Below are positions 15,855 to 58,655 of a stretch of 64,000 nt of DNA, one piece after another (the stretch's first letter is position 1; the number at the start of each line of letters is the position of its first letter). The position numbers and the translations under genes were made by a program. Below the pieces are notes generated by a model, which was given only the letters and a program-made list of their open reading frames with translations, had not been told where the DNA came from and ran no database searches. The stretch is taken from NCBI GenBank assembly GCA_011109175.1, contig RDEW01000001.1, forward strand, positions 446,395-510,394, written 5' to 3'. The DNA comes from Dicyema japonicum (Eukaryota; Animalia; Dicyemida).

Positions 15855-16220
15855 TTTCATCACTTCTTAAAAGTTTCTTCGCTTCGAGTGTATGGTGCTC
15901 ATACTTTAGGCCTTTTCTGATTAATGTAAGTAGTCCTCCACGTTTCTTAGTGCGGCAAGAGGCGTAGTATCTTTTGCTGATAGCTTCGATTCTTGGATGA
16001 GCACGATGTCAGCTTTAAGTTTAACAATCAGAGTTCTAAGTTCAATAATTTTGCCTTTTATTCAGTTCATATTTAGTTGTATAATGGAGATCCGGTCTAT
16101 GACTTGTGTAGGTTAAAAATCCTAGAAGCTGTCGCCAGACCAGTAATCCTTGGAAATACTTTAGGAGCATTTTGAGCGCCTCCAGAATTGTTGCATCCGG
16201 TGAGCCACATGAGGCCACGC
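15855..16220 (-). mobile_element. Ingi/Vingi-like element 5' end (endonuclease N-terminus)
   Basis: IIQLNMN.IKGKIIELRTLIVKLKADIVLIQESKL...RGGLLTLI; 5' motif CGTGGCCTCATGTGGCTCACC matches CGTGGCGTCATGTGGTTCACC at 31787. Confidence 0.8.
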
Positions 16221-17107
16221 TAAGATTGTGTTTTAATTTTGTTTTATTAATAACCAAATAATTGTAGTTTGTGTTATAATTAATGGGTATCACACTTCAA
16301 ATAACAATAGATAATAATTAGTTCACATTGATTTGAATTTACTATATTAGCCATTCCAATATTAATGCTTCCATCACCACTTAGGAGAAGGGATAATTTA
16401 AGGTCAGACATCAAGAGAATACGATACTGAATTTATGAATGACTGAGAGTCAACAATATAGTTTTATGATCAAATATTTTAATATAAAAATATTTGAATT
16501 CTAGAGTGATCGATTTGTGATCGCATTAATTAAATAACTCAAACAATCCGAAATTTATTTTACGTAAGCCAGAAGATCTCAATGAAACTCTGGCCTTTTA
16601 ATTTCATCGATGAAATGCCCTGGAAATGGAAAAGAAACAAAGTGATCCCAACAAACTGCGGTTTAATACAAGTGAATAATTCCCTCAGAATCCAGCCTAG
16701 CAAGAAGAAAGTCCATTCTAAAATCCGAAGGGGCAATCCAAGTCAAACACGTGGAGGTAATAATAATGATTGTTGAGGCATCATTATAGCTGTTTTCTGA
16801 CATTTAGTGTGTTAGTCTTAAAAAAGTCTCCTTCCCAGACGAGATGACTGAGCAAAAGCCACTCTGTGTTGTCCACGAGATTAGAAAAACAAAGTCATCG
16901 AAATGCAGCTTATTTTAAAATCTATTTTATAACAGTTTAAATATTATATTTTCACGTTTTTATTCTTTTTCTCACGAATCCCCCACTCTTTTCTTCCTTG
17001 ATTCATAAGATAATGGAAACCCAAGATTTTAAACAAGGAGATCGTAAAATGCGGGTTATACTATAATAATAGTTTCACGTGGGAGAATTAAAAGAAATAT
17101 AAAATCG

Positions 17108-20719: not shown

Positions 20720-23430
20720 TGATGGAGGTAGGACAGTTATCTTTGGGGATGGATGACGCCACGAGAAATATTATTGTCAAAAACCATAATGGTGGTGATC
20801 ATGCAGTCCTAACCAATTTGTATTCCCTTTCGTTTATCATCTAAGATGCTACATGTGTCTCTGAAGCTGGATGGGTGTATGAGATAGTTTATGCTGCGAA
20901 ACAGAAGTTTGGGAGGATCCCTAGAGGCAGATGGAGCCTTATCCTTAATCAGTTCAATGCGAAATTTTCGAAGAGTTCAAATATGTGTCAGCTGAAAAAG
21001 ATGGTCAAACAAATAAAAGGGGATAAGATTGATGGAGTAGCAAAATGGTGTAAATATGGAAATTTCAGAAAGTGTATAGAACTTAAACTCCAAATTAAGG
21101 AAATTAAGTCATTCCCGAGGGATACTCGAAAACCATCATTTAGAAGTATGTCAGAGTTAATATCTAAATCTGCGATTTATTATATTACGAAAGATGACCT
21201 CCTCAAGATATTAATGAGATATCCCATATTATTTATGCAGTGTGCATATATGGTTTTAATTGTGTTGGTTAAATTTCAGAGTACGTGGTTGGAGAACGCT
21301 GAGAAGAAAATCTAAAACTGACGGCAGAACTAGAACCTGTCAATCGTTTTCCAGCCAGGCTCTCCCTGTGTTTGAAAAACAAAAGGTTGTGGATGTTCTT
21401 TGTGCCTATAGATACAAAAGGGAGAGCCAGGACTGATGCTCTACTACGTGACCTGGTCAGAGTTAAGAAAAAGCAAAATAGCTATACATATATGGTTTCG
21501 ATGATGAAGATTGTATGGCGTTCTGGGAACAATTGTGAAAAGAAATGAGATGTCCGTATAGAAAGTGTTGGTAAAGTAATACTGGTGTCGAGGGCATGTT
21601 TGCCAGAGATCACGAATGAAATTATCTTTGATGTTATTAAATGGCTCCCCGATTGGAATGAGTGAGGATGGCAATGGGTCATACAATTTATTAAGAAAAT
21701 GTGATCTTTACATGGTTTATGTACTGAGATTAATTTAATTAATTAATGGGGAATATATGAAAATTGGTCATACTGGAATAACCTATTTAATTCCTTAAAA
21801 GATGATTGTGAGACTCATAAAGACTAACTATAACGTTATGCCAACATTATATTACAAAATGTGCTAAACTCTCAGATTTTGTGGATGTGTTTGGGCTATT
21901 ATCTGACAATCAGCTGGGGACGAGGAAACATTGTCAGGACGCAAAGGAACAAGCCTTTATTAATCAATGCTTAAATAAGGAGTATGGAAACGCACTTTAT
22001 TCTGCTTGGGTTGATGTGAAGAAGGCCTGTAAATCTCTAGTTTGATGGAGGAATTGGCTATGTAAAGTTGGGACGTGGAATTCTGCAATGAGATTCATTA
22101 TCCCACTATTTGTTATAGTAATGGAACACCTGAGTAGGATCCCTAACTCTTTGTTCCCAATACTCCAAATTAATCAGGAGGATAACAATACTTATTCCAC
22201 CAATCATTTGTTTTATTGACGATCTAAAATTATTTGGACTAAAAGATACTGTTATTAAAATAATGGAAGTTGTTCGCGAGTTCTTTCATGTTGCCGACTT
22301 GGAGATAAATTCGGAAGTCAGCTTTTAATGTTAAAACATTATCATGGTGTGAGACTCTGGAAGGAGTGAATGGATATTGATATTTGAGTGTTTTTTGAAG
22401 ATGGGGAAGTAATGTTCTTAAGAATTAAGTTGTTAAGGATGTTTTAAAAAACTAAATTTTGCGAACTTATTTCATGCAATAAATGAATATGCGATTCTCC
22501 ACCTATTATATTGGACTAATTAACCTTATTATTTTGATGAACCGTCAAATACGGAAACTGCTTACGACCCTTAGGTCACCTCAAACCTGCAAATAAAGAG
22601 AGGTTATATTTATCAGGGAGACTTCTGGGAAAGGACTTGATCAGTCACTTTCAAAAGTGAACTGATGCTTTTCCAGTTCCATAAAAAATCAGGAAAAGTA
22701 GTCGGCTATATGTTTGCGGAGGTCGTAGATTACCTTTTGCGAGACAGGAATTTGTTCTTTTCTACGTCGGGGACATTATGTAACCATTGCAAGAAATACA
22801 AGAAGACTGTTGACCACCTGGATGTTAACAGTGATCATGTCCGAAGGCTCAACGAAGTTGCAAAATGCTTACATCTCCATCTATGCAGAGAATATGTAGT
22901 CAAAAAGGCTAGACAGTCGAAGGGACATTCAGTCGATTCTATCAACACAGAATGTTGAGATGAGAGTCTAACTGAAACGAAAGTACAGTTCAACAAACCA
23001 GATATCTTCTTATATAACAAGATCCAGAATTATATAAGTCTAATCCAAATGGGAATTACATCTCAGGGTCGCATAAAACAGGTGGAAGTAGAAAAAGTTG
23101 ACCTCATCGCAAGTGAGATTTCGCTTCTCTACGATTGTCAAGTAAAGAATATCTCACTGGTTTTGCCATGGGATGAAGTTGTTTCGAAATGGTCCAAAAA
23201 TTATATAGATAAACTATCTGTTGAAGGAGCAATGAAAACATACATCCATTAGTTTTGTTGAAAAGACTCTCGAAAGTATGCAAATTGAACAAAAACACGG
23301 GATTAAGGTTTCTGATGAAGAGTACATCTCTGCTACTTCTCAACTTGAGGAATGCCGTGAGGACATCCCACTGAACTCTAATAGAGATATTTCGACTGAT
23401 CCTGAGGTAGAGATTGGGAATAAGGAGTTG
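20720..23430 (+). mobile_element. R4/NeSL-type RLE non-LTR element, near full length but heavily decayed
   Basis: QLGTRKHCQDAKEQAFINQCLNKEYG...AWVDVKKA, FIDDLKLFG, CNHCKKYKKTVDHL zinc knuckle, FNKPDIF...GITSQGRIKQVEVEK; collinear with 34745-38470. Confidence 0.85.
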
Positions 23431-23544: not shown

Positions 23545-23608
23545 GGCGTCATTGGATCCACCATACTGAGGAGATGCTCAATGCTTGGCCTGCATCAAGA
23601 GGATCCAA
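23545..23608 (+). ncRNA. Predicted HDV-like ribozyme at the 5' end of a decayed Ingi/Vingi-like copy
   Basis: P1 GGCGTC/GATGCT, P2 TTGGATCC/GGATCCAA, P3 (A)CC/GG(A), P4 ATGC/GCAT, C23596 followed by AAGA in J4/2. Folded by eye. Confidence 0.65.
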
Positions 23609-24380
23609 CTATTCTTTGCCCAGTGGACAATGACGTTACCTGGAGACAAGTTCTGGAACGCTGGAACGATTCAGGATCAAGTAGTTAGTTTGGTTACCCT
23701 TGGTCTTTGGAATAATTTTAATTTAATATACTTCTTTATTCCTTATGTTGTTATGGAGAACTAAGCACAACGAAAAGAAATGGAAAGCCGCTTTGAACAG
23801 TGCGAATAAAAACAACCTCGTTGTTATGGAGAACTAAGCTTAAGAATATTCCCACTGTAACTACTTCTCCACATGTCAGGAATAAACCCCGACATACTTG
23901 TCGCCATAAGCAACAAACCTTACTCTAGATCTTTGGATGATCAACCAAAACACATGAGAATTAAAAAATGGCCGATCATTAAGTTATTGTAGATCTACAA
24001 TCAATTATGTGAAGAACACATTACCCAGGGAACAGATCTCAATAGCATTTTGGATCACTCACCATCAAGACGATAACCAAAAATAAACAAAATTCCAACA
24101 AAATTAAAATCCTTAATATATCCTCTACTGAAAAAGGATAAACCTTGTTCTTACCAGGCAATATCAATCTTGTTCGGACTGTCACAAAAACTGTAAAAAC
24201 TAGTCATCAACTAGATCACCCCATTCTTACAACTTCCCCTACTCCAAACTGGATTCAGGACACTCTATTCTAATCAAGAATTAATTCAATTTATCTCTGA
24301 CGGATTGAAATACGCAAAGCTACATGAGAGAATTGTGGTGGTCTCTTTAGACATCGAGAAAGTTTTTGACTCGGTTTGTT
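23545..24380 (+). mobile_element. Highly decayed Ingi/Vingi-like element (5' end and RT remnant)
   Basis: 5' ribozyme-like end; IYPLLKKDKP, QTGFR and VVVSLDIEKVFDSV remnants at ~24110-24375. Confidence 0.55.
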
Positions 24381-26194
24381 ATGTAAAAAAAGATTAAGAG
24401 GATGTAAATACTGTCGACTATATTGACTTGTCCAGAAATACAAGAAGGGAGTATGTAATATACTGAAAGAGTATGTTAACCATAATAGTCACAGTTATCT
24501 TCACTGAATGTAATTAACAACTCTTTGTGCAAACGCTGGATTATTAAGTCATTAGAATCATTGTGTTCTCGCATTTTCTCACCTCTTATGTAAGATTTCT
24601 TATGGATAATCAAGATGTCTTTTGAGTCAGCAATTTCATCTTTATTAGGTCGTCGTTATGGACATCACTCATTCTAGTATTTGTTGTCAATATTAAACAT
24701 TTATTTAAATATTAATTTTGTTATAAAAATAAGCTGAAAATGAATTAATAACTGTGAATGTGACAGAGGACATTGGAGAGGATTCAATTGATTCAAGGAA
24801 ATAAAATTGGATACAAATAGATGCGATCGATTTTGATGAGGGGGATACTGTGCTCAAAATCAGAAAATGTGAAATTCTAAATGCCGATTACTTTAAAAAA
24901 TATAAAAATACAAAGGCTAAAAGAAATGGTGAAAATACAAAAACAGTCAAAGGACTACTAAACAATGCTCTCGGGGACGATCATCGACCAAGAAAGGAAT
25001 ACAATCATGACGACCGAAAAAGTAAACATTGTTTCTCAAAATTTCAAATGAATATTCGACATGAAGTCGACAATGTGATCGAACTATATTAATATAGAAA
25101 ACTCTATAGGACCACATCTGCTATTGGAAAATTCGATACGGGAAAATCAGCAGATGGTGAATTATTGAGTTGGCTACATTCATAATTATACCAACGAACT
25201 AGTTAGGTTGGATAAACTATACTTCATTGGAACTTTAATTTCAATACAGAAACCTGACAGGGAAGGTTAAATATTATAGCGACAATACGCAAAATTGATA
25301 TTCTGGCTGTTCTGGACAAAATCCAGGTTAATAAATTCCTATCCTTAAACTAAATTCTGCATTGGAAGGTTGAGCATAGATGAGGTATGGGTACATAGAT
25401 GGTTTATTGGTCTGTAAGTGTAAAACCTCTATTCACAACCTGAGAATAATCCCTTTAGGCGTTTGACACAATAAAATAAAAAGTTGTTTGACAGCTTCAT
25501 GGGTCTTGATTAGACACGTCTATAATCTTTATAAGACGTAGAAGATGAAGAACATGAAAATGCTGGCTATAATTGATATAAATTACAACGGATTATTCAA
25601 TAAGAATATCTTAAAGTATCTATGTTCAAATAATTAGACGATCCTGGTGTTTGTCAGGAGTGAGTTCCCAATCTGCAATTATATTCAATCCTGAATTTGT
25701 GTGTTAACATAATTTAGTGAATAAAAATTCGATGAAATTAGTGAATAAAGGAAACAGAAATTATACAGGTTATCTTTACATTGTTAATCGGTTTTACTAG
25801 TTACCCTCACTAACATGCAGGAGGTTAGATTCTATCAAACATCCACCGAGAGAGTACTGGGCCTTCCACAAGTCCCTGGTGGTCCTGTTTCGAATTGTCT
25901 TTTGGCAGTAGGAGACTTACTCTTATATAATAAGTAGGATTTTAATAATAATTCATGACAAAATAGGACAATTTTTTTAATTGACCTTATTAATAATTCA
26001 TTTAACTGAATTGTCACATATTCCCCCATCAAAGATGGGAATCAATCATAATAATAGAACACTCCTGTAAAAATCGCATACTTGCACATAATAAATCCAA
26101 GTGATAAACCATAGACTAATCAATACTTAACAATTGAACTTAATTATGTTTACCCAATCGAAAAAACACGGAATAAGGAAATTATCAATTCTAA

Positions 26195-31499: not shown

Positions 31500-31700
31500 T
31501 TCCATACACTATCGAAATATCTACAATCATACAGAAATTTTGAGCCGATGCCACGTCCAATGAGAAGAGCTGTTCAGGATTCTCGACCCCGCCGAACTCG
31601 TCCTTTCCTTTGTCGTCTGGATCACTTAGTTAGTTGAGAACTTTTTATTTCTGTCTCTTTGACCCAGTGATCCTGGAGGTAATAATGACAATAATAAATT
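31500..31700 (+). mobile_element. Ingi/Vingi-like 3' terminal fragment
   Basis: Near copy of the reverse complement of 6465-6640 (YLQSYRNFEPMP.PMRR.VQDSRP), with a TAATAA-type tail. Confidence 0.85.
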
Positions 31701-31789
31701 ATTATTTATTTATTATTTAATAACCCCGAAAAGGGAACACCAAGAAAGAAGGAGTAATCCAACTAATTAAGTGAGTTGAATTTTCTCGT

Positions 31790-31851
31790 GGCGTCATGTG
31801 GTTCACCTTTTGTGGTGGCGCTCAGTGTAATAATACACCAAAAAGAACCAT
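31790..31851 (+). ncRNA. Predicted HDV-like self-cleaving ribozyme at the element 5' end
   Basis: P1 31790-95/31817-22 with a first G-U wobble, P2 31798-804/31845-51, P3 ACC/GGT around L3 TTTTGT, P4 GTGTA/TACAC, candidate catalytic C31839. P1.1 is non-canonical. Confidence 0.7.
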
Positions 31852-31947
31852 TTGCTCTTCCCCATCCAGACTCTTATGCCTGGATGGTATACCTCAACTG
31901 GAAACTCGAGATGTTGTTTGCTCCCCTGGATTCTATTGCTTTCTGGA

Positions 31948-31971
31948 GATATTGAACAAAACCCCGGACCA
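31948..31971 (+). other. 2A-like StopGo (ribosome-skipping) motif DIEQNPG-P
   Basis: Exact D(V/I)ExNPGP consensus preceded by ILLLSG, in frame with the endonuclease domain. Confidence 0.85.
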
Positions 31972-34744
31972 AAACCCCTTGTTATTATGCAACTCAATGC
32001 TAACGGAATAAAAACAAAGATTCTGGAGTTACGATCTTTATTAACGAAGCACAAGATTGACATCTGCCTTATCTAGGAGTCAAAACTTTTTACAAAGAAT
32101 ACAACCCCACTTTTTCCTTGATACATCTCTATCAGAAAAGGCCGTATCGGACGTGGTGGCGGATTACTCTTATTAATAAAAACGGTTTATCTTCGACTAT
32201 GTAGCTCGCAAGTGGATGATTTAATTTTACACGACAAGACCGCGGAACAAATTTCTATTGATCTTATTAATAGGTCAGAACATCTTATTCTAATCAACTT
32301 TTACATTCCACCGCCGGGATCCTGTCCTAATAACTATGTTCCGAAGCTCGACAAACTACAAGAAATTCGAAATGTGTTACTATGTGGGGATTTCAATGAC
32401 AAACATCCGCATTGGCTTAGTACTCAGTCGGCAGACAAGAGGGGGAGTCTAATTATCGACTCTCTCAAAAAAATGGTGATTCTGAATCACCCGAATATGT
32501 TCACAAGGACATCTATCCGAAGAAATGACAACCCAACCTCCCCCGACATATCCATTGCTTCCTCTAGGATTGTCCCGAAGATTTCATGGAACGTCTCCTA
32601 GGATTTTTATAGTGATCATAATCCAATCATATTAAAACTGAGCCGATTCAATAACTCGCGTAGAATTAAAGCAACCTTCAAGGTCTACAAGAAAGCTGAC
32701 TGGTCGAATTTCAAGCTCTTCATTGACAATAACCTAATACACTTTGATCCCACCTCATTTTGCTCCATCGACAAAGCAGTGGACCATCTAAACCATGTAA
32801 TCCTTCAAGCTGAAAAGTTGTTTGTACCACGTGCAGTTTACAAATCCTACAAGCCTACTCTGGACTCGGAGACTCGTCTCCTCATCAAACAAAGAAACTC
32901 CCTGAAGATGAATCATCTGCAAACCTCTTCTGATTTGCAAAATATAAAATGCTTAAATCAGAGAAAAGAAAGATAGGGCGTGGAAGCGCCTATTATCATC
33001 TATTGGACATATGAAATCCACGAGTCTTTTATGGAAAACTATTCGTCGAATCAAGCTAAACTTATCAGATGAATCAGAATCTTTTTCTGCTCCAAATACT
33101 GTGCAAGCTAACAACCTAATGAAATATTACGCATCCATAAGCCACAAGGACTTCTCGAAATCCATTCTTGTCACTTTCGGAATTTAGTGCCTAAACCAAC
33201 TTCATGGATCAATCTGTTTACGCATGCCGAGGTCACACAGGCTATAAGATCGATGAAGAGATCTTTTACGTGTGGACCTGACGGCATCCCGGGAATTTTG
33301 TTAAAACACCTTGGTAATGCTGCAATCAATTCAATTACGTCAATTTTTAATTTGTCTTCTAACATGAACGTCATCCCATGCAAATGGAAAAACTCACTTA
33401 TAATACCGATCCTTAAACCAGGAAAACCGAAAACCTTACCTTCTTCCTACCGTCCAATTTCATTAACGTGCGCATTATCGCGCCTAATGGAGAAACTCGT
33501 ACTCTGGAAAATTAAACCCCATTTGCCCGACTGCCACTTTCAACATGGTTTCAAATGTGAGCGTTCAACTACGACACATTTGACTTCACTGTCTCAATTT
33601 ATATCAGAAGGGTTCAACGTAGCGAAACGCCATCTACGGACAATAATGGTTTCCTGGATATCCAGAAGGCGTTCGATTCTGTCTCGAGAATATTACTCAC
33701 GAAGAAGGTTTTTGACACCACCATTCAGACGGATTTGAAAGATGGATAGCCAATTTTCTCTCCGGAAGAAGAGGACGTGTCTGTATAGGCCACGCAAGAT
33801 CGAGGTCCCGTCTCCTACCAAATGGCGTCCCTCAAGGATCGCCCCTTCTCCGGCATTATTCAACTTGTTCCTCAACGATTTACCCTGCCCTGGAGGACCA
33901 GATTCAATGCTTCTCACTTATGCTGACGACCTAATCATCGCTAGCAGGAACAAATACGTGGGTACAGCAAAATCAGAGCTTCAGTCACATATTGACGACC
34001 TGGGAGCCTGGTTGAAGTTGAATCGTCTCTCCGTATCCAGGGACAAATCAACATATACAATCTTCACCACGGACAGAAAAGAAAAACATACACTTGATTT
34101 GAACATTTTGGAGACTCCTTACCACTACAGACTCGTCCAACTATCCTGGGAGTGACATTTGACCTTTGATGTCATTTTCTCAACATGTGAAGAACGTTAT
34201 GACAAAGGGTCTCAGGAAACTTAATATAATCAAACCGCTCTTGAAGTCAAACCTTCACAGGAATGCGCCCTCGTCGTGTTCAATCAACTCCTAAAACCGA
34301 CGATTGAGTACGCCTGTGCCTCATGGGCCTATGGAGCTTCGATATCAAATTCACTCAAGATCAATACCCTAATTGGAAAACTAGCACGTCAAACGAATCT
34401 ACCCCCGATCTTTTCCCTCCAATGCTTGACCACGCCGCAATCAAAAATAATGGCTCCGGCTTCATCTGTCTGTGTGGCCAAGAAACAAGTCGTTTCTTCC
34501 ATTCAAGGCTAAAGGCTTCAAATACTCGAAATTTGGGGAAAAACCCCACTCCTCTTCAAACCCTAATGAAAGATGATCGTCGTTTATTCAGGAAAGCCGT
34601 GGGTACTCTGGAGGAACACAGGAAAAACCTCTCGATCCTGTTGAGGCGTACCGGATCACAATAATAAATGCCTCCTTCAGACCATCCGTGACCGCTATTA
34701 TAATTTAAAAATAATAATTAAATATAAATTTAAAGCCACTTTAT

Positions 34745-37700
34745 TTAACCAACAATAAAAAGTTAATATTTAATAATCAACAACCTTCCTCGCCTGCCTG
34801 TTAGCCAGCCTCCTCAAGCAGGTTCGATACTGGTTGCAGAAACAACTCCAGAGCGCCTTGTCCAATTGAACTCTCTGCCTATATGGCCTCTCCGGGCTCT
34901 GCCTACTATACTCCAGTGTCAGGCTCTCTAGGGTCCGCTTTAATACAGTGGACTGTAGATAGGCCTGGAGCTTCCTATCTACCCCTAACTGCTTCAGATA
35001 ACCCTTGTAGTACTTTGTTGCAATTCCTTCCCACGTCATTATTATATGAATAACGAGGACCTTGCAACCAAGCATCTGCCCCATCTCGTTTGCAAGCAAG
35101 TCATACTTCCTTTTTTTCTCCACCTCCACAGTCTGCAAACGGTCTTGAGACGTAATGCCAACCTCTATGATAAGGACTTGGCCAGACTCCTTATCGTGTA
35201 CCACAATGTCTGGTTTATTGTGCTTGACTAGCACCGAGGTACGGATAACACTGTCTACCTTAATTTGGACCCTGGTGTTCTCTACTACAGATTGCACCTT
35301 ATGAGTCCGCAACTTTCTGGTGTGGCGAATACCATACTTATTGCATAGTAGAAGATGAAGACTCCTTACTACCTCGTTATGCCTCTACACATAGTCGTGG
35401 CAGAGCATGGATCCACATCGAGTGGCTAAATGATCAACCGACATGCTCCTTGACTTACAGTGGGGACATGTATTTGTTGATCGACCCCAAAAAATATTGC
35501 GGTCTTGCATATACGTGTACAACGCCTCCGATCGAGGTGAGTTGTCACCGTATTTTAGCCATATTGTCGACGACTTAAGGTCGACATGTGGGTTGTCCAA
35601 TGCTCTGAAGAGGACCTTATGAAGGCTTTTTAAGTTGATCTTTTCCATCAAATTATTATATTGTAATTCGATCAACGCCTTCACATTTACTAGCCCACCA
35701 TCATCAACACCATACTTAGCAGACAAAAAAGGTCTGATAGTGCCTAGGTGGGTTGCCCGTGTTTTCTCGGTCGTTATTATGGCGTGCTTCCTAGCAGACA
35801 CACTTGACCCAGCTATCAGGGTGTCGTGCATTCGCATTAGGATACGCTCACTTAGTTGGACTACTCCACACAGTCCACGGCCGAATTTATCACGGGGTAA
35901 ATATAGTCTCTCCTTATTGGCTGCCAACACATGGACATGGTTCTCTCTGAGTACTCCACGGATCATAACATCCATCTCATCATACTCTTTGGGCTCAAAC
36001 TCCACAACACCTATGTAGTAGTTTAGCAGCGAGACAGCATACTCATTTAATGCTAGGAACAAATTCCTTGCATTTAGAGACGTCTTACACAATAACGCTG
36101 CTCTTTTACGGATGCCTTCAGTAATTTGTCGCTTTGTCTCAGGCATTATAAGGGACTTTGGAGATTCGGTAACACCCAGATACTTATATCCTTCGTGTTC
36201 CTCTAGGACTCTTACTAACTCGCTACATACTTGCGTGTTAGTCGCAGACTTTGAATAAATCAAATCTAGCCTATACTCTCAAAGAATTCCCTGGCACAGA
36301 CTCCCATGGAGTAGAGCTCCTCGGCTGTTTGAGCATACATCTTCAGGTCATCGATAAAAAGAAGGTGATTTGTGCTAAAGCAACCCCTTCACAATGAACT
36401 GGTATTTGCTCAAACCGGTCATTGAGGCGGATACTCAATGGCTCCAAACAGATAATAAAGAGAAGCGGAGACATTATCCCCCTGAAAGATCCCCCTCTTA
36501 AGTTTTACCTCGCCTATCCGGTACCTATTATAGTTCAGATGAATTACTCCACCTATTCATCACAGCCACTACAAAGCTGATGAACCACACAGGCATACAC
36601 AGGCTGTGTAGGCACTCGACAAGGTAAGAATGATCAACTGAATCGTAAGCCTTCTTCACATCCACCCACATAGACAAATGTGAGTTTCCGTGAGACATAG
36701 AAAGGCATTTGTTGATCAAAGCCTGCTCTTTTGCCCCCTGACAATTTCGCACAGTACCCAACTAATTCTCGGAGAATCCCATTTGCTTCTACAAAGCTCC
36801 TGACCTCATTAGCCACCAATTTGGTCATCAGTTTATACAGGGTTGGCATGCAGGTTATCGGTCGATAATCTGCAGCAGATTGGGGTTGTCCAGCTTTGGG
36901 ATCAAAATAAGTTGTCCCTGTGCATGCCCAATCAGGAATCGTTTCCGGTTAGTGATGCTTTCTGTAATACACGACACATAGACTCGTGCGATGAAATGCA
37001 TCTTTTGATAAAGAAATTATAAACTTTATCGTCCCCGGTCGTTTTCCAATCAGGGAGATGTCTCACTACCGCCTCAAACTTCTTGCGGAAATCGAAAATT
37101 CCGCACAATTCCGCCAAGAAAAGAGCGGCGCTGTACGGGACATTCCACGCATTACCTCTGCGTGGTTTAGCCTCCCACATACTACCCATGGTGGCTTAGT
37201 GGTTAGGTGTCGGGCTTAAGTGGCTTAGGTTACGGGTTCGAATTTCGCTGCTGTTCACCTGGTGGAAGGTTCCACGCATCTACGATGCAGAAATGGTTTG
37301 ACGAGTGACGCCGTCATCAGTGAATACTCACTGCGGAACTGGATTGTCTAGAAAGGACACTCACACAAGAAAAAGAAAAAAGAAGTGAAGATCATTTCTT
37401 GGTTCTACGATTAGTTAAAATTAACTGTTCTTTACTTAAATGTGTGTCCTGCCTATGTGGAGCTATAAAATACTATGGCTCTCGTGAAAAGGCTTTATTA
37501 TTATATTATACTACCCCATGTGGAAAGCATTTCCGCGTCCTGCTGGGAACATACACTATGGCCATTTTCGTGTAGGCGGCGGTAAAACAATCTGCGATTA
37601 AACTTAAACAGATATTTTATCTCCTTCTCTTACACCGACTTTCATGTTTTTAGAGTTTCTTCTTATACACCATTATTGCCCCCTCTAATCCCACTTTGCC

Positions 37701-38470
37701 CTCCTCAACTCTTTGAGGTCCCGTTTGGGAACACGGAGTTTACTAATTAGCCTTTTACTAGAGGCGGTGCTTTTCTTCTAACCCCTCTCGCCACACTACT
37801 TATGTGCCCCTCCAGTGCTTCCAGCTCAGTCTGTCTCCAAGCAATCTTGGCACAGATCTGTTCCCTCCATTTACTGGGTAGTCTGGTGATCTGTGCTGCA
37901 TACAGCACTAGGGAGATGTCACCCAGTGACCCTACTGGCTTAGCCTCCATCGCATAAGCCACAGCCTTATTGATACAGGTTAACACTACTCCGTTAACTT
38001 TACAATGAGGGATCTTGCGGGTAAATCTACGGTCCTCAAGTGGGACATCTGCAGCTGCAGCGAGATTCCGCGCAAAGACCTCATAAACATGCTTGAGCTG
38101 CAACGTATCACAGCTCTGGTGCTCGTGCTCTCTTTGACAGTTGTGGTCATCTGGTCCCCGCCCATTTGAACCAGTACCCTCTTTGCCTACAGCCATTTTA
38201 TTGAGTTCACTCACAGATATAGCAGTACTGAATCTGCCACTGCAGAGTTTCGCCAAGTATGGCCAACCATTCCAGGGCATTCGGGATAGCCTGCTACGTA
38301 CCTGCAGGACTACCTGCCTCACCCATTCTTTTGGGTCAGCTGCCACAACGCTTTCGGATATGGCAAGAGTAATATTCATACCATCAGGTAACGCAAGTGA
38401 CCTTTCTCTTTTTTTCCTTTCAACATTTTTACCAACTTTGAGAGTTTTAACGCCACCGAAATATAAATTA
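34745..38470 (-). mobile_element. R4/NeSL-type RLE non-LTR retrotransposon, near full length, interrupted by a SINE
   Basis: GAKEQALINKCL, WVDVKKAYDSV, FQGDNVSASL, HLLFIDDLK, RLYLPRDKFGRGL, CPHC..VDHLATRC zinc knuckle, HNKPDIVVHDK...IEVGITSQD..EKKRKY restriction-like endonuclease. Confidence 0.93.
37190..37507 (+). mobile_element. tRNA-derived SINE, ~320 bp, copy 1
   Basis: A box TGGCTTAGTGG, B box GGTTCGAAT (37235), (TTA)n tail; flanked by ATACTACCC(C)ATG at 37179-37190 and 37508-37520; splits the RLE element ORF. Confidence 0.9.
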
Positions 38471-56583: not shown

Positions 56584-57068
56584 TATTATTTTACAAAAAT
56601 ATTTAGATTTAATTATTTTACAAGATTAAGTGTAATATTGTATTAAAGTTAGTTAAATCGGATTAATGCGTACTATTTGTTCTAATTACATTGATTACGT
56701 CAAACCAATGATGAATTCTTTTATCGATTAATAATGAAACTATAAGAAAATTAACTCTTTTTAGCAGCACCGAATATACCCCATGAACTTAAATACGCCT
56801 CTAATGTTCAAGTAATGTCTTAAGGGATTCATAAACTTGACCACCAAATCTAAAATCAAATTTTCATTTTTGGATTAACAAATTTTTGGAATTCAGCATA
56901 TTTCTTAGACGAGTAAGCCAAGTGGGTAATTATTAGAATATTGAGGTGTGACGTACATCATTTCTTTTGTTTTTATTTTTTCGTAGGTAACGTCAGAAAT
57001 ATTGTAGAAACCTTATTCAGGGGATGAAAATATGTAAAATTGTAAGATTATTGAAAATTAGTAAAATG

Positions 57069-57398
57069 GCAACACAGAAAACGTCACCCTGACCGAACAC
57101 AGTAAGGATTGGCAGATTAATAACTTTTTCTTTATACTGTGGGTACAGGCTCCGTTGTTGGTTGGTGGAGTGATCTCTCTGGTTAATTCCGATAACGGAC
57201 GAGACTAAACCTACCTACTAGTTGTTCAACTTCTTAGAGAGATCAGTGTTTAAAACACTTGAATGTGAGCAATAACAGGTCTGTGATTGCCCTTTGACGT
57301 TCGGGGCTGCACGCAGCTAAGAAAGCATTAGATGTCTTGTTTGGAAAAGTAAGCTAAACCTTAAAATTTTTTTGTGACGGGAATCAAGGCTTGTAATT
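57069..57398 (+). pseudogene. 18S rRNA fragment (3' half), decayed and dispersed
   Basis: GGATTGGCAGATT, GTTGGTGGAGTGAT, CTGGTTAATTCCGATAACG, AACTTCTTAGAG, GAGCAATAACAGGTCTGTGAT and GGGGCTGCACGC appear in SSU rRNA order; no further rDNA on either side. Confidence 0.9.
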
Positions 57399-58655
57399 TC
57401 ACGCGACTTGTTGTGGTATTGAAAAAGATTAACTCTACGTAATCCTTCTGAACAAATATATGAGTTAATTTCAAACGTGACACACGAAGACTTCTGATCA
57501 GGATTCCCAAAGATGGCCGTTTATCTGTCGCGAACTGTCTATACGAGTGTATTGAAGGGCAGTCTCTTCGGCCGACTCTAAGGATTGGGTAAGATTATTT
57601 TACTTCGCTCCAAACACAAAATGCATACTCAATAAGAGGGGGAAAGAAGAGAAATCACTCAAGTCAATAGTAAAAGAAAATATCCACACATTATCCACTA
57701 AGAACTTATTTGTTGACTCTTAATGCACAGGTACAGATTCCAAAACTATGAGAAGCAAACATCGATTGTCTCGGACAAACAAAGATTACGAAATGCAATA
57801 CGTCGAAAGCTTTCTGTAGATGGAATCTGTGCGGCCGTACACTTACTATAGTGAAACAGGACTTGTTGATATTGACCCGGATATATGAAATTTAAATATG
57901 AGGATCTCAGATATGAGAGATTTAATAAAAGTTGAACTACTCAAGCTTTTATATCTACTCCGATGTTCACCCTGCTACGAACAATACGACACTCTACTTT
58001 CAATATACAAATCTCTCAAGCAAACTGTTGAGTCACTAATTAACGTCCGCTTCGACGAACTTGGTTGGAAACAATGTAAGCTTCCCTCTGGATTTGTGGT
58101 GTCGGTCTGAGATCGGCGCTGGAGGTTGCGTACCCGACATATCTATCGTCTCTCTCAAGCTGCAGCCATTTGACACGGCAAGTCCTTCATAACACTATTG
58201 GACTTCGCTGGAATGAGTCATTTGACGAAGCTTGTAGGAAATTGAACGGGTCCGGACTCAAAATCCCCGAAGACACAACAAAGAAAAGTAATTGGGATAA
58301 CATTGTCTGCTCCAAAATTTTGGAAGACCTTAAAAAAGAAGCAAATCAACATCGTCTGGCTTGTTTGGTGTCAGCTTCAAGTAGAGGGAGTGGAACATGG
58401 CTTGGTGCAATACCTTGCCCAAACCTCAGGACCTTTCTGGACGACGATTCTTTGAGGATTGGAATCTGAGAAAGGCTGGGACTAGACGTTTGCCAGGAGC
58501 ACCGATGCCGATGCGGGAAAACAGTCGATGCGAAGGGATTGCACCCGCTGTCCTGCAGAAGAAGCGCCGGAAGGGGACCACGTCATGCTGCTCTGAACGA
58601 TGTGATCGTCAGAACTCTGAAGGCTACAGTCTTCTCAGCACAGCTTGAACCAGTT
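57399..58655 (+). mobile_element. CRE-clade element, 5'-truncated and internally deleted
   Basis: [83 protein letters not shown]. Confidence 0.85.

What the first reader, a model, noticed from the sequence alone, without database searches (positions are those of the whole stretch)
31790..31851. HDV-like ribozyme variant with non-canonical P1.1
Seen: all four helices (P1 6 bp with G-U at the cut site, P2 7 bp, P3 3 bp, P4 5 bp) occur in nested double-pseudoknot order with C31839 in J4/2. L3 is TTTTGT and the linker is CA instead of the usual C-rich L3 and GG, so P1.1 is at best a single U-A pair. Standard descriptors requiring C-G in P1.1 would probably miss it.
Basis: partly seen in the sequence, partly recalled or inferred. 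Interest (0 to 1): 0.8.

Follow-up and report, generated by a model that had tools for sequence, protein, structure and literature searches.

The report
HDV-type ribozyme fold heading a LINE
A 62-base stretch in front of a jumping gene (a LINE retrotransposon, probably from a cephalopod) folds like the hepatitis-delta self-cutting RNA and is kept by selection, but one core contact is weakened and inserted copies keep the bases that cutting would remove, so whether it still cuts is open.

Summary

The fold alone is no better than chance: 1 hit against 0.57 expected per shuffled window. Three other lines of evidence show it is real:
- It lies 24 nt upstream of the AUG of a 2A-APE-RT LINE on the same strand.
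- A second copy (23545-23608) has 15 helix substitutions, 6 of them compensatory doubles and only one breaking a pair (neutral simulation P = 1.5e-5).
- Seven more distant 2A-LINEs carry HDV-like folds at the same place, with L3 fitting U.(C/U)(A/U)CG., and an Octopus sinensis LINE carries a near-copy of this one.

The inner P1.1 pair is present and covaries in all 8 relatives. It is mismatched only in the two window copies. A shifted 2-bp P1.1 (UG of L3 with CA) is possible.

Laid contigs and other copies begin 3 to at least 33 nt upstream of G31790, never listed at it. Cleavage therefore does not define the 5' end of inserted copies.

Verdict: a diverged HDV-like ribozyme module, with about even odds that it still cleaves. 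Earlier notes of this scan described the same module elsewhere in this genome.

The parts
31775..31789 (+). Leader remnant upstream of the proposed cut site (GTTGAATTTTCTCGT). The -1 base is U.
   Evidence: The last 8 nt recur identically before GGCGTCAT at 20753-20768 on the minus strand. Contigs of other runs begin at 31779, 31781 and 31787-89. The unrelated repeat to the left ends at 31774.
31790..31851 (+). HDV-type double-pseudoknot module: P1 31790-95/31817-22, J1/2 31796-97, P2 31798-804/31845-51, P3 31805-07/31814-16, L3 31808-13, J1/4 CA 31823-24, P4 31825-29/31834-38, J4/2 31839-44.
   Evidence: The only descriptor hit in the window.
31839..31839 (+). Candidate catalytic cytosine (C75 equivalent), first base of J4/2.
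   Evidence: A C directly after P4, followed by A-rich sequence, in 7 of the 10 compared sequences; in L004 and L012 one base precedes the C, and L002 has CCGAAAA. C>A in only 2 of the X1 contigs laid.
31811..31812 (+). UG of L3 that could pair with CA 31823-24 (shifted P1.1: U31811-A31824, G31812-C31823).
   Evidence: The same UG/CA is present in copy 2. The octopus copy has UC/GG (C-G plus U.G). This rests on one covarying event and is a hypothesis.
31876..31971 (+). AUG and 2A (StopGo) peptide, ...LLLSGDIEQNPGP, at the start of the LINE ORF.
   Evidence: Translation. 35 of the 150 APE homologues contain an NPGP motif, nearly all within the first ~110 residues.
31972..32640 (+). APE endonuclease domain, decayed (3 stops).
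   Evidence: Pfam PF14529, E = 2e-9. phmmer hits.
33187..34155 (+). Reverse transcriptase domain, split by a stop codon at 33736-33738.
   Evidence: Pfam PF00078, E = 3.7e-10 and 3e-4.
34600..34720 (+). 3' tail of the element (...ACCTCTCGATCC..GGCGTACCGGATCAC...) followed by an A/T-rich end. The exact end is not fixed.
   Evidence: The reverse complement of 34626-34655 is the usual continuation of the abundant repeat at 31726-31774.
23545..23608 (+). Second copy of the module, from a different subfamily, followed by an RT fragment (about 24000-24400). The APE domain is deleted.
16130..16216 (-). Degenerate copy (GGCCTCATGTGGCTCACC...) with a 33-nt A-rich leader. No P2 3' strand was found. Probably a short non-coding derivative.
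   Evidence: Its leader matches 25 of 33 bases of the consensus upstream of 15 X1 contigs.
20753..20768 (-). 16-nt fragment, TTTCTCGTGGCGTCAT, identical to 31782-31797 and followed by unrelated sequence.

Best explanation
The stretch is the HDV-ribozyme-type module in the 5' UTR of a very high-copy, single-ORF LINE (AUG, 2A peptide, APE endonuclease, reverse transcriptase). Its closest protein relative is in Octopus sinensis. It descends from the clearer HDV-like ribozyme folds that sit at the same place in related 2A-LINEs. I think it most likely still cuts itself 5' of G31790, but slowly or partially because the inner P1.1 pair is lost. Cutting would remove the leader or any read-through host RNA and leave a 5'-OH RNA whose folded end lies 24 nt before the AUG; that RNA would serve mainly as message. 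The RNAs that become new copies are mostly uncut, since copies keep the leader. Shown here: the fold, selection on it, its position, homology by position, and retention of the leader. Inferred: cleavage, its rate, and the split of roles between cut and uncut RNA.
For: The geometry and core bases are present: G.U at the cut site, U at -1, a C right after P4 followed by A's, U first in L3 and G next to last in L3. The module lies on the same strand as a Pfam-confirmed APE/RT ORF with a 2A start, 24 nt before its AUG. Copy 1 and copy 2 differ at 15 of 40 helix bases, with 6 compensatory doubles and 1 broken pair; a neutral simulation gives P = 1.5e-5. Between the window element and the octopus element, whose APE domains are 47% identical, the only nucleotide-level similarity is 31772-31870. 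There P2 is identical and P4 is compensated. Seven further relatives (L002-L005, L010-L012) have the same helix order, an L3 of U.(C/U)(A/U)CG., and a C with an A-rich run in J4/2. Within the family only the P4 loop varies inside the module. An HDV-like ribozyme with a one-pair P1.1 is active in L1Tc (PMC3185411).
Against: No cleavage data exist. The inner P1.1 pair, present and covarying in all 8 relatives (C-G, U-A, U.G), is U.C here and A.C in copy 2. P1 is 6 bp. Contigs of other copies start at 31787 (X1 15, X3 13, X5 2), 31788, 31789, 31781 and 31779; none is listed as starting at 31790. Leaders of 8 to 33 nt recur upstream of G+1. In Drosophila R2, where the ribozyme is efficient, upstream bases are not propagated (PMC3774820). 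There is no Rfam match. Thermodynamic folding without pseudoknots is unremarkable (z = -0.44).
Confidence: 0.5

Rival explanations
1. It is a former ribozyme: a conserved HDV-shaped pseudoknot that no longer cuts. It would be kept for another job in the LINE RNA, such as helping translation start at the nearby AUG, binding the element's own protein, or stabilising the 5' end.
For: The inner P1.1 pair is lost only in this family. The leader upstream of the cut site is retained in copies and in the abundant short derivative. No copy starts are listed at 31790. The helices are still under selection, so a function remains.
Against: The bases needed only for catalysis are still kept in both window subfamilies even though the helices changed: the C after P4, G.U at the cut site, U at -1, and the L3 U and G. 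A one-pair P1.1 supports activity in L1TcRz. A shifted two-pair P1.1 (UG/CA) is available.
Confidence: 0.38
2. The conservation reflects a DNA-level internal promoter at the LINE 5' end (as Pr77 is in L1Tc), not an RNA structure.
For: The block conserved with the octopus element also covers flanks that are not in helices (31772-31789 and 31852-31870). In L1Tc, the promoter and the ribozyme overlap (PMC3383444 abstract).
Against: A promoter does not explain 6 compensatory double changes with pairing kept in 19 of 20 pairs. It also does not explain entirely different helix sequences with the same architecture in ten elements. It could coexist with the RNA fold.
Confidence: 0.05
3. It is a chance match to a permissive descriptor.
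For: The descriptor without P1.1 is expected 0.57 times per shuffled window and was seen once. There is no Rfam hit.
Against: The position, strand, covariation, conservation across species and recurrence in relatives all argue against it.
Confidence: 0.02

Closest known systems
L1TcRz, the HDV-like ribozyme of the L1Tc/NARTc LINE of Trypanosoma cruzi (Ingi clade)
   Same: It is an HDV-like fold in the first ~80 nt of a single-ORF APE-RT LINE whose ORF begins with a 2A peptide. Its P1.1 is reduced to one pair. Short non-coding derivatives keep the module (PMC3185411, PMC3383444, PMC3708506).
   Different: L1TcRz cuts at +1 of the element and has been shown active. Here the proposed cut site lies 9 to 33 nt or more inside the repeated unit, activity is untested, and the host is an animal, probably a cephalopod.
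R2 ribozymes of insects and other animals
   Same: They are HDV-like folds at the 5' end of a non-LTR element, with P1, P2 and P4 free to covary while L3, P3 and P1.1 stay conserved (PMC3774820).
   Different: R2 is site-specific and co-transcribed with 28S rRNA, and its upstream bases are not propagated. This element is dispersed, its upstream bases are propagated, and it has an APE rather than a REL endonuclease.
CPEB3 ribozyme (mammalian HDV-like ribozyme)
   Same: From my own knowledge, not tested here: its L3 reads UUCACGU, the same pattern as L3 of the relatives L003-L005 and L011-L012, and it has a weak P1.1 with one Watson-Crick pair and a U.U mismatch, as in L004 and L012.
   Different: CPEB3 keeps the inner C-G pair next to the cut site, whereas the window family lacks exactly that pair. 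CPEB3 is intronic and single-copy.

Membership tests
HDV-like self-cleaving ribozymes | Nested double-pseudoknot order P1-P2-P3-P3'-P1'-P4-P4'-P2', with P3' directly abutting P1' | tested here: met
HDV-like self-cleaving ribozymes | Unpaired catalytic C at the start of J4/2, followed by purines | tested here: met
   C31839 followed by AAAAA. A C with an A-rich run lies in J4/2 of all ten compared sequences, directly after P4 in seven. It is almost invariant in the family.
HDV-like self-cleaving ribozymes | G at +1 in a G.U wobble closing P1 | tested here: met
   G31790.T31822. The same holds in copy 2 and L011. Other relatives have G-C, C-G or A-U.
HDV-like self-cleaving ribozymes | P1.1: two pairs between L3 positions 2-3 and the P1'/P4 linker, the inner one stacking under the cut site | tested here: not met
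   Only the outer U31809-A31824 pairs; the inner U31810/C31823 is a mismatch. The inner pair is present in 8 of 8 relatives. A shifted UG/CA pairing is possible but unproven.
HDV-like self-cleaving ribozymes | L3 with a 5' U and a G near its 3' end (U20 and G25 equivalents) | tested here: met
   T31808 and G31812. Each is present in 9 of 10 sequences compared.
HDV-like self-cleaving ribozymes | P1 of about 7 bp | tested here: inconclusive
   There are 6 clear pairs. A seventh, A31796-T31816, is possible only by taking T31816 away from P3.
HDV-like self-cleaving ribozymes | Helices supported by compensatory change | tested here: met
   Copy 1 against copy 2: 6 double changes and 1 broken pair, P = 1.5e-5. 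There are 2 to 6 standard pair types at every helix position across ten sequences (the distant ones were found with a pairing descriptor, so they are biased).
HDV-like self-cleaving ribozymes | Site-specific self-cleavage giving a 5'-OH at G+1 | not testable with these tools
   The runs available are assembled contigs and carry no read starts.
HDV-like self-cleaving ribozymes | Match to a curated covariance model (Rfam HDV or CPEB3 families) | tested here: not met
   No hit at E up to 10. The clearer relatives do not hit either, so this says little.
5'-end-defining ribozymes of non-LTR retrotransposons (R2 and L1Tc type) | In the 5' UTR, on the same strand, upstream of the element's ORF | tested here: met
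5'-end-defining ribozymes of non-LTR retrotransposons (R2 and L1Tc type) | The cut site coincides with the 5' end of inserted copies, and upstream bases are not inherited | tested here: not met
   Contig alignments begin at 31779-31789, most at 31787. A 33-nt leader is shared by copy 4 and the X1 consensus. A 16-mer spanning the cut site is repeated at 20753-68.

The most novel reading that the evidence does not exclude
The family has rebuilt the ribozyme core. P1.1 would be re-registered to the 3' side of L3 (U31811-A31824 and G31812-C31823, compensated to C-G plus U.G in the octopus copy), and the module works from inside the transcript behind a heritable leader. Uncut RNA would then be the template for new copies, and cut, uncapped RNA would be the message. 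That would be both a new core variant of the HDV fold and a new division of labour for a LINE ribozyme.
Probability: 0.15. Interest if true: 0.65.

Novelty: new variant of a known kind. Interest (0 to 1): 0.45.

Why it matters
HDV-like ribozymes at LINE 5' ends are established for R2, R4, R1, RTE, LOA and Ingi/L1Tc (list in PMC5786205). I found no paper linking them to octopus, and the 2A-in-LINE survey does not mention ribozymes.

The data suggest that a ribozyme-plus-2A head is a common feature of a widespread group of single-ORF APE-RT LINEs, not a peculiarity of trypanosomes. They also provide a natural series of P1.1 states at one homologous site: C-G/G-C, C-G/U-A, U-A alone, and none in the canonical register. 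Such a series is useful for asking how much P1.1 the fold needs.

Retention of the leader raises a concrete, testable question: is cleavage partial by design, or has it been lost?

Tried and rejected
- Rfam at gathering score and at E up to 10, on the window and on eight related loci: no HDV or CPEB3 hit.
- Nested-only folding energy: uninformative.
- MAFFT alignments of the distant relatives misplace the helices, so I did not run the count of structure pairs or build a covariance model. I parsed the helices by script instead.
- Target-site duplications for copy 1: ambiguous in A/T-rich flanks. The left flank is another repeat.
- Searches from the octopus protein P0001 (its N-terminal 70 residues, then the whole protein) for more close copies: nothing from the N-terminal region and only two distant proteins (32-33% identity) from the whole protein.
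- Pattern scan of metagenome contigs for the conserved core: 0 hits.
- Runs X1-X4 are kept only as assembled contigs of unknown kind, so RNA 5' ends could not be read.
- I suspected shared leaders among the distant relatives (L003 and L004). A shuffle-controlled alignment did not support this, and I dropped the claim.
- L006 and L007-L009 gave no convincing fold.
- The LINE clade (Ingi/Vingi-like or CR1-like) was not determined, because no reference set was available.

Full report
**1. What is in the sequence**

- P1: GGCGTC 31790-95 with GGCGCT 31817-22, with G31790.T31822 at the proposed cut site.
- J1/2: AT.
- P2: GTGGTTC 31798-804 with GAACCAT 31845-51.
- P3: ACC 31805-07 with GGT 31814-16.
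- L3: TTTTGT.
- Linker: CA 31823-24.
- P4: GTGTA/TACAC with loop ATAA.
- J4/2: C31839 followed by AAAAA.

In the canonical register, P1.1 has one pair (U31809-A31824) and one mismatch (U31810/C31823).

**2. Is it more than chance?**

As a bare pattern it is not. A descriptor that requires these helices, G.U at the cut site and a C after P4, but no P1.1, hits once in both strands of the window. It hits 0.57 times on average in 200 dinucleotide shuffles. Rfam gives no HDV-type match. Pseudoknot-free folding energy is ordinary. The case rests on context and comparison.

**3. Context**

The module lies 24 nt upstream of an AUG at 31876. That AUG opens a 32-residue 2A peptide (...LLLSGDIEQNPGP). 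It is followed by an APE endonuclease (PF14529, E = 2e-9) and a reverse transcriptase (PF00078, E = 3.7e-10), all on the + strand and decayed by stop codons. The element ends near 34720.

In the 450 nt upstream of the 2A codons, none of 60 shuffles reaches the observed descriptor score.

Contigs of public runs show that the family is very abundant and young: 2663 contigs were laid from run X1, and 512 of them are at least 99% alike.

**4. Other copies in the window**

That copy shares these unpaired or anchoring bases with copy 1:
- GGCGTC plus AT
- ACC
- the CA linker
- a C followed by an A-rich J4/2
- UG in L3

P2 (TGGATCC/GGATCCA) and P4 (ATGC/GCAT) are different sequences that still pair, and two changes in the 3' strand of P1 keep pairing.

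Of 40 helix bases, 15 differ. These make 6 compensatory double changes and break only one pair. Random substitution of 15 bases does as well in 1.5e-5 of 200,000 trials. This comparison was anchored on conserved unpaired bases, not on a pairing descriptor.

Two further pieces exist:
- A degenerate copy on the minus strand, with G+1 at 16216.
- A 16-nt fragment at 20753-68.

**5. Relatives elsewhere**

A phmmer search with the APE piece found 435 proteins with E up to 0.001. The best hit is an Octopus sinensis protein at 47% identity. Of the top 150 hits, 35 contain an NPGP motif, nearly all within the first ~110 residues.

In the octopus locus (L001), the only nucleotide-level similarity to the window element is 31772-31870, which is the module and its immediate flanks. 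P2 is identical and P4 is compensated (ATAC/GTAT).

Seven more distant 2A-LINE loci (L002-L005 and L010-L012) carry folds of the same architecture upstream of the 2A codons, with unrelated helix sequences. Features the descriptor did not ask for are shared among them:
- L3 reads U.(C/U)(A/U)CG. in all seven.
- J4/2 contains a C next to an A-rich run (CAAAU or CAAAC in three).
- The middle P3 pair and the innermost P2 pair are each C-G in 9 of the 10 compared sequences.

Each locus taken alone is only weakly significant, and the pairs in these seven were selected by the descriptor. The shared unpaired signature is therefore the independent evidence. Rfam does not detect these either, so its silence on the window copy carries little weight.

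**6. P1.1**

I scored the inner pair as L3 position 3 with linker position 1, and the outer pair as L3 position 2 with linker position 2.

| Pair | Eight relatives | Window copy 1 | Window copy 2 |
|---|---|---|---|
| Inner | present in all 8; covaries (C-G x3, U-A x4, U.G x1) | U.C mismatch | A.C mismatch |
| Outer | paired in 4 of 8 | U-A | U-A |

A weak P1.1 is not new in itself. L1TcRz has a single pair and cleaves in vitro (PMC3185411). Here, however, the pair that is lost is the one next to the cut site.

An alternative I noticed is that CA can pair with UG at L3 positions 4-5 (U31811-A31824 and G31812-C31823). The same UG/CA is kept in copy 2 although the rest of its L3 differs. The octopus copy has UC/GG at these places (C-G plus U.G). 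That is one covarying event in a copy that also has a broken first P1 pair, so it remains a hypothesis.

**7. Where copies begin**

If self-cleavage defined the RNA that is copied, inserted copies should begin at G31790 and have unrelated flanks, as described for Drosophila R2 (PMC3774820). They do not.
- Contig alignments start at 31787 (15 in X1, 13 in X3, 2 in X5), and at 31788, 31789, 31781 and 31779. None is listed as starting at 31790.
- The consensus of what lies upstream of 31787 in X1 matches 25 of the 33 nt upstream of the copy at 16216. A leader of at least 33 nt therefore belongs to that abundant subfamily.
- Copy 1 and the fragment at 20753-68 share 8 nt upstream of G+1.
- The alignment with the octopus element runs about 18 nt upstream, which is weak evidence.
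- To the left of 31775 lies a different, even more abundant repeat. It is an antisense copy of the LINE/SINE 3' tail.

The proposed cut site is therefore internal to the repeated unit.

**8. Mechanism**

What is shown:
- A conserved RNA fold of HDV type sits in the 5' UTR of an active-looking LINE family.
- The bases needed for catalysis are retained.
- The inner P1.1 pair is lost.
- The leader is inherited.

My best reading (0.5) is a weakened ribozyme. It cuts part of the transcripts, whether leader-containing or read-through, and leaves a 5'-OH RNA with the fold at its end, 24 nt before the AUG. New copies come mainly from uncut RNA.

The main rival (0.38) is a former ribozyme kept as a structural element. 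A DNA promoter as the only explanation (0.05) and a chance match (0.02) are poorly supported.

**9. Comparison and novelty**

The closest known system is L1TcRz with its 2A-APE-RT ORF and its NARTc derivatives. R2 ribozymes and CPEB3 are close in fold.

[quoted passage not shown] 2A peptides in animal LINEs are known (PMC3708506). I found no paper tying HDV-like ribozymes to octopus.

I rate this a new variant of a known kind. Several earlier notes of this scan describe the same module, and the same leader paradox, on other pieces of this genome.

Noticed in passing
window 57061-57455 (+): A fragment of eukaryotic 18S rRNA (model positions 1178-1606, 146 bits) sits alone in the window. It could be an rDNA pseudogene piece or a target remnant of a site-specific element.
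   Followed up: no
window 31726-31774 and 31621-31683: Two stretches just upstream have summed contig depths about 4 times that of the LINE (about 0.8-1.0 million against about 0.23 million in X1). The first normally continues with the reverse complement of the LINE 3' tail (34626-34655), so it is an antisense, 5'-truncated tail of the LINE or its SINE partner.
   Followed up: partly
window 16050-16250 (-): A short element: an A-rich leader of at least 33 nt, a degenerate HDV-like head (enlarged L3, no P2 3' strand found), then about 100 nt ending in a tail with GACCGGATC, like the LINE 3' tail.
   Followed up: partly
window 20753-20768 (-): A 16-nt exact repeat of 31782-31797, spanning the proposed cut site, followed by unrelated sequence with a hairpin (attcttgc...gcaagaat). 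Its origin is unclear.
   Followed up: no
L003 351-416, L011 90-169, L010 163-229: Clean HDV-like ribozyme candidates with a paired inner P1.1 (both pairs in L003 and L011), upstream of intact 1061-1128-residue 2A-APE-RT ORFs in unidentified eukaryotes. They would be good positive controls for cleavage assays.
   Followed up: partly
window 34770-36263 (-) and 37747-38379 (-): A GC-richer block (0.41-0.44) with minus-strand ORFs of 180-292 residues right after the LINE, possibly another mobile element.
   Followed up: no
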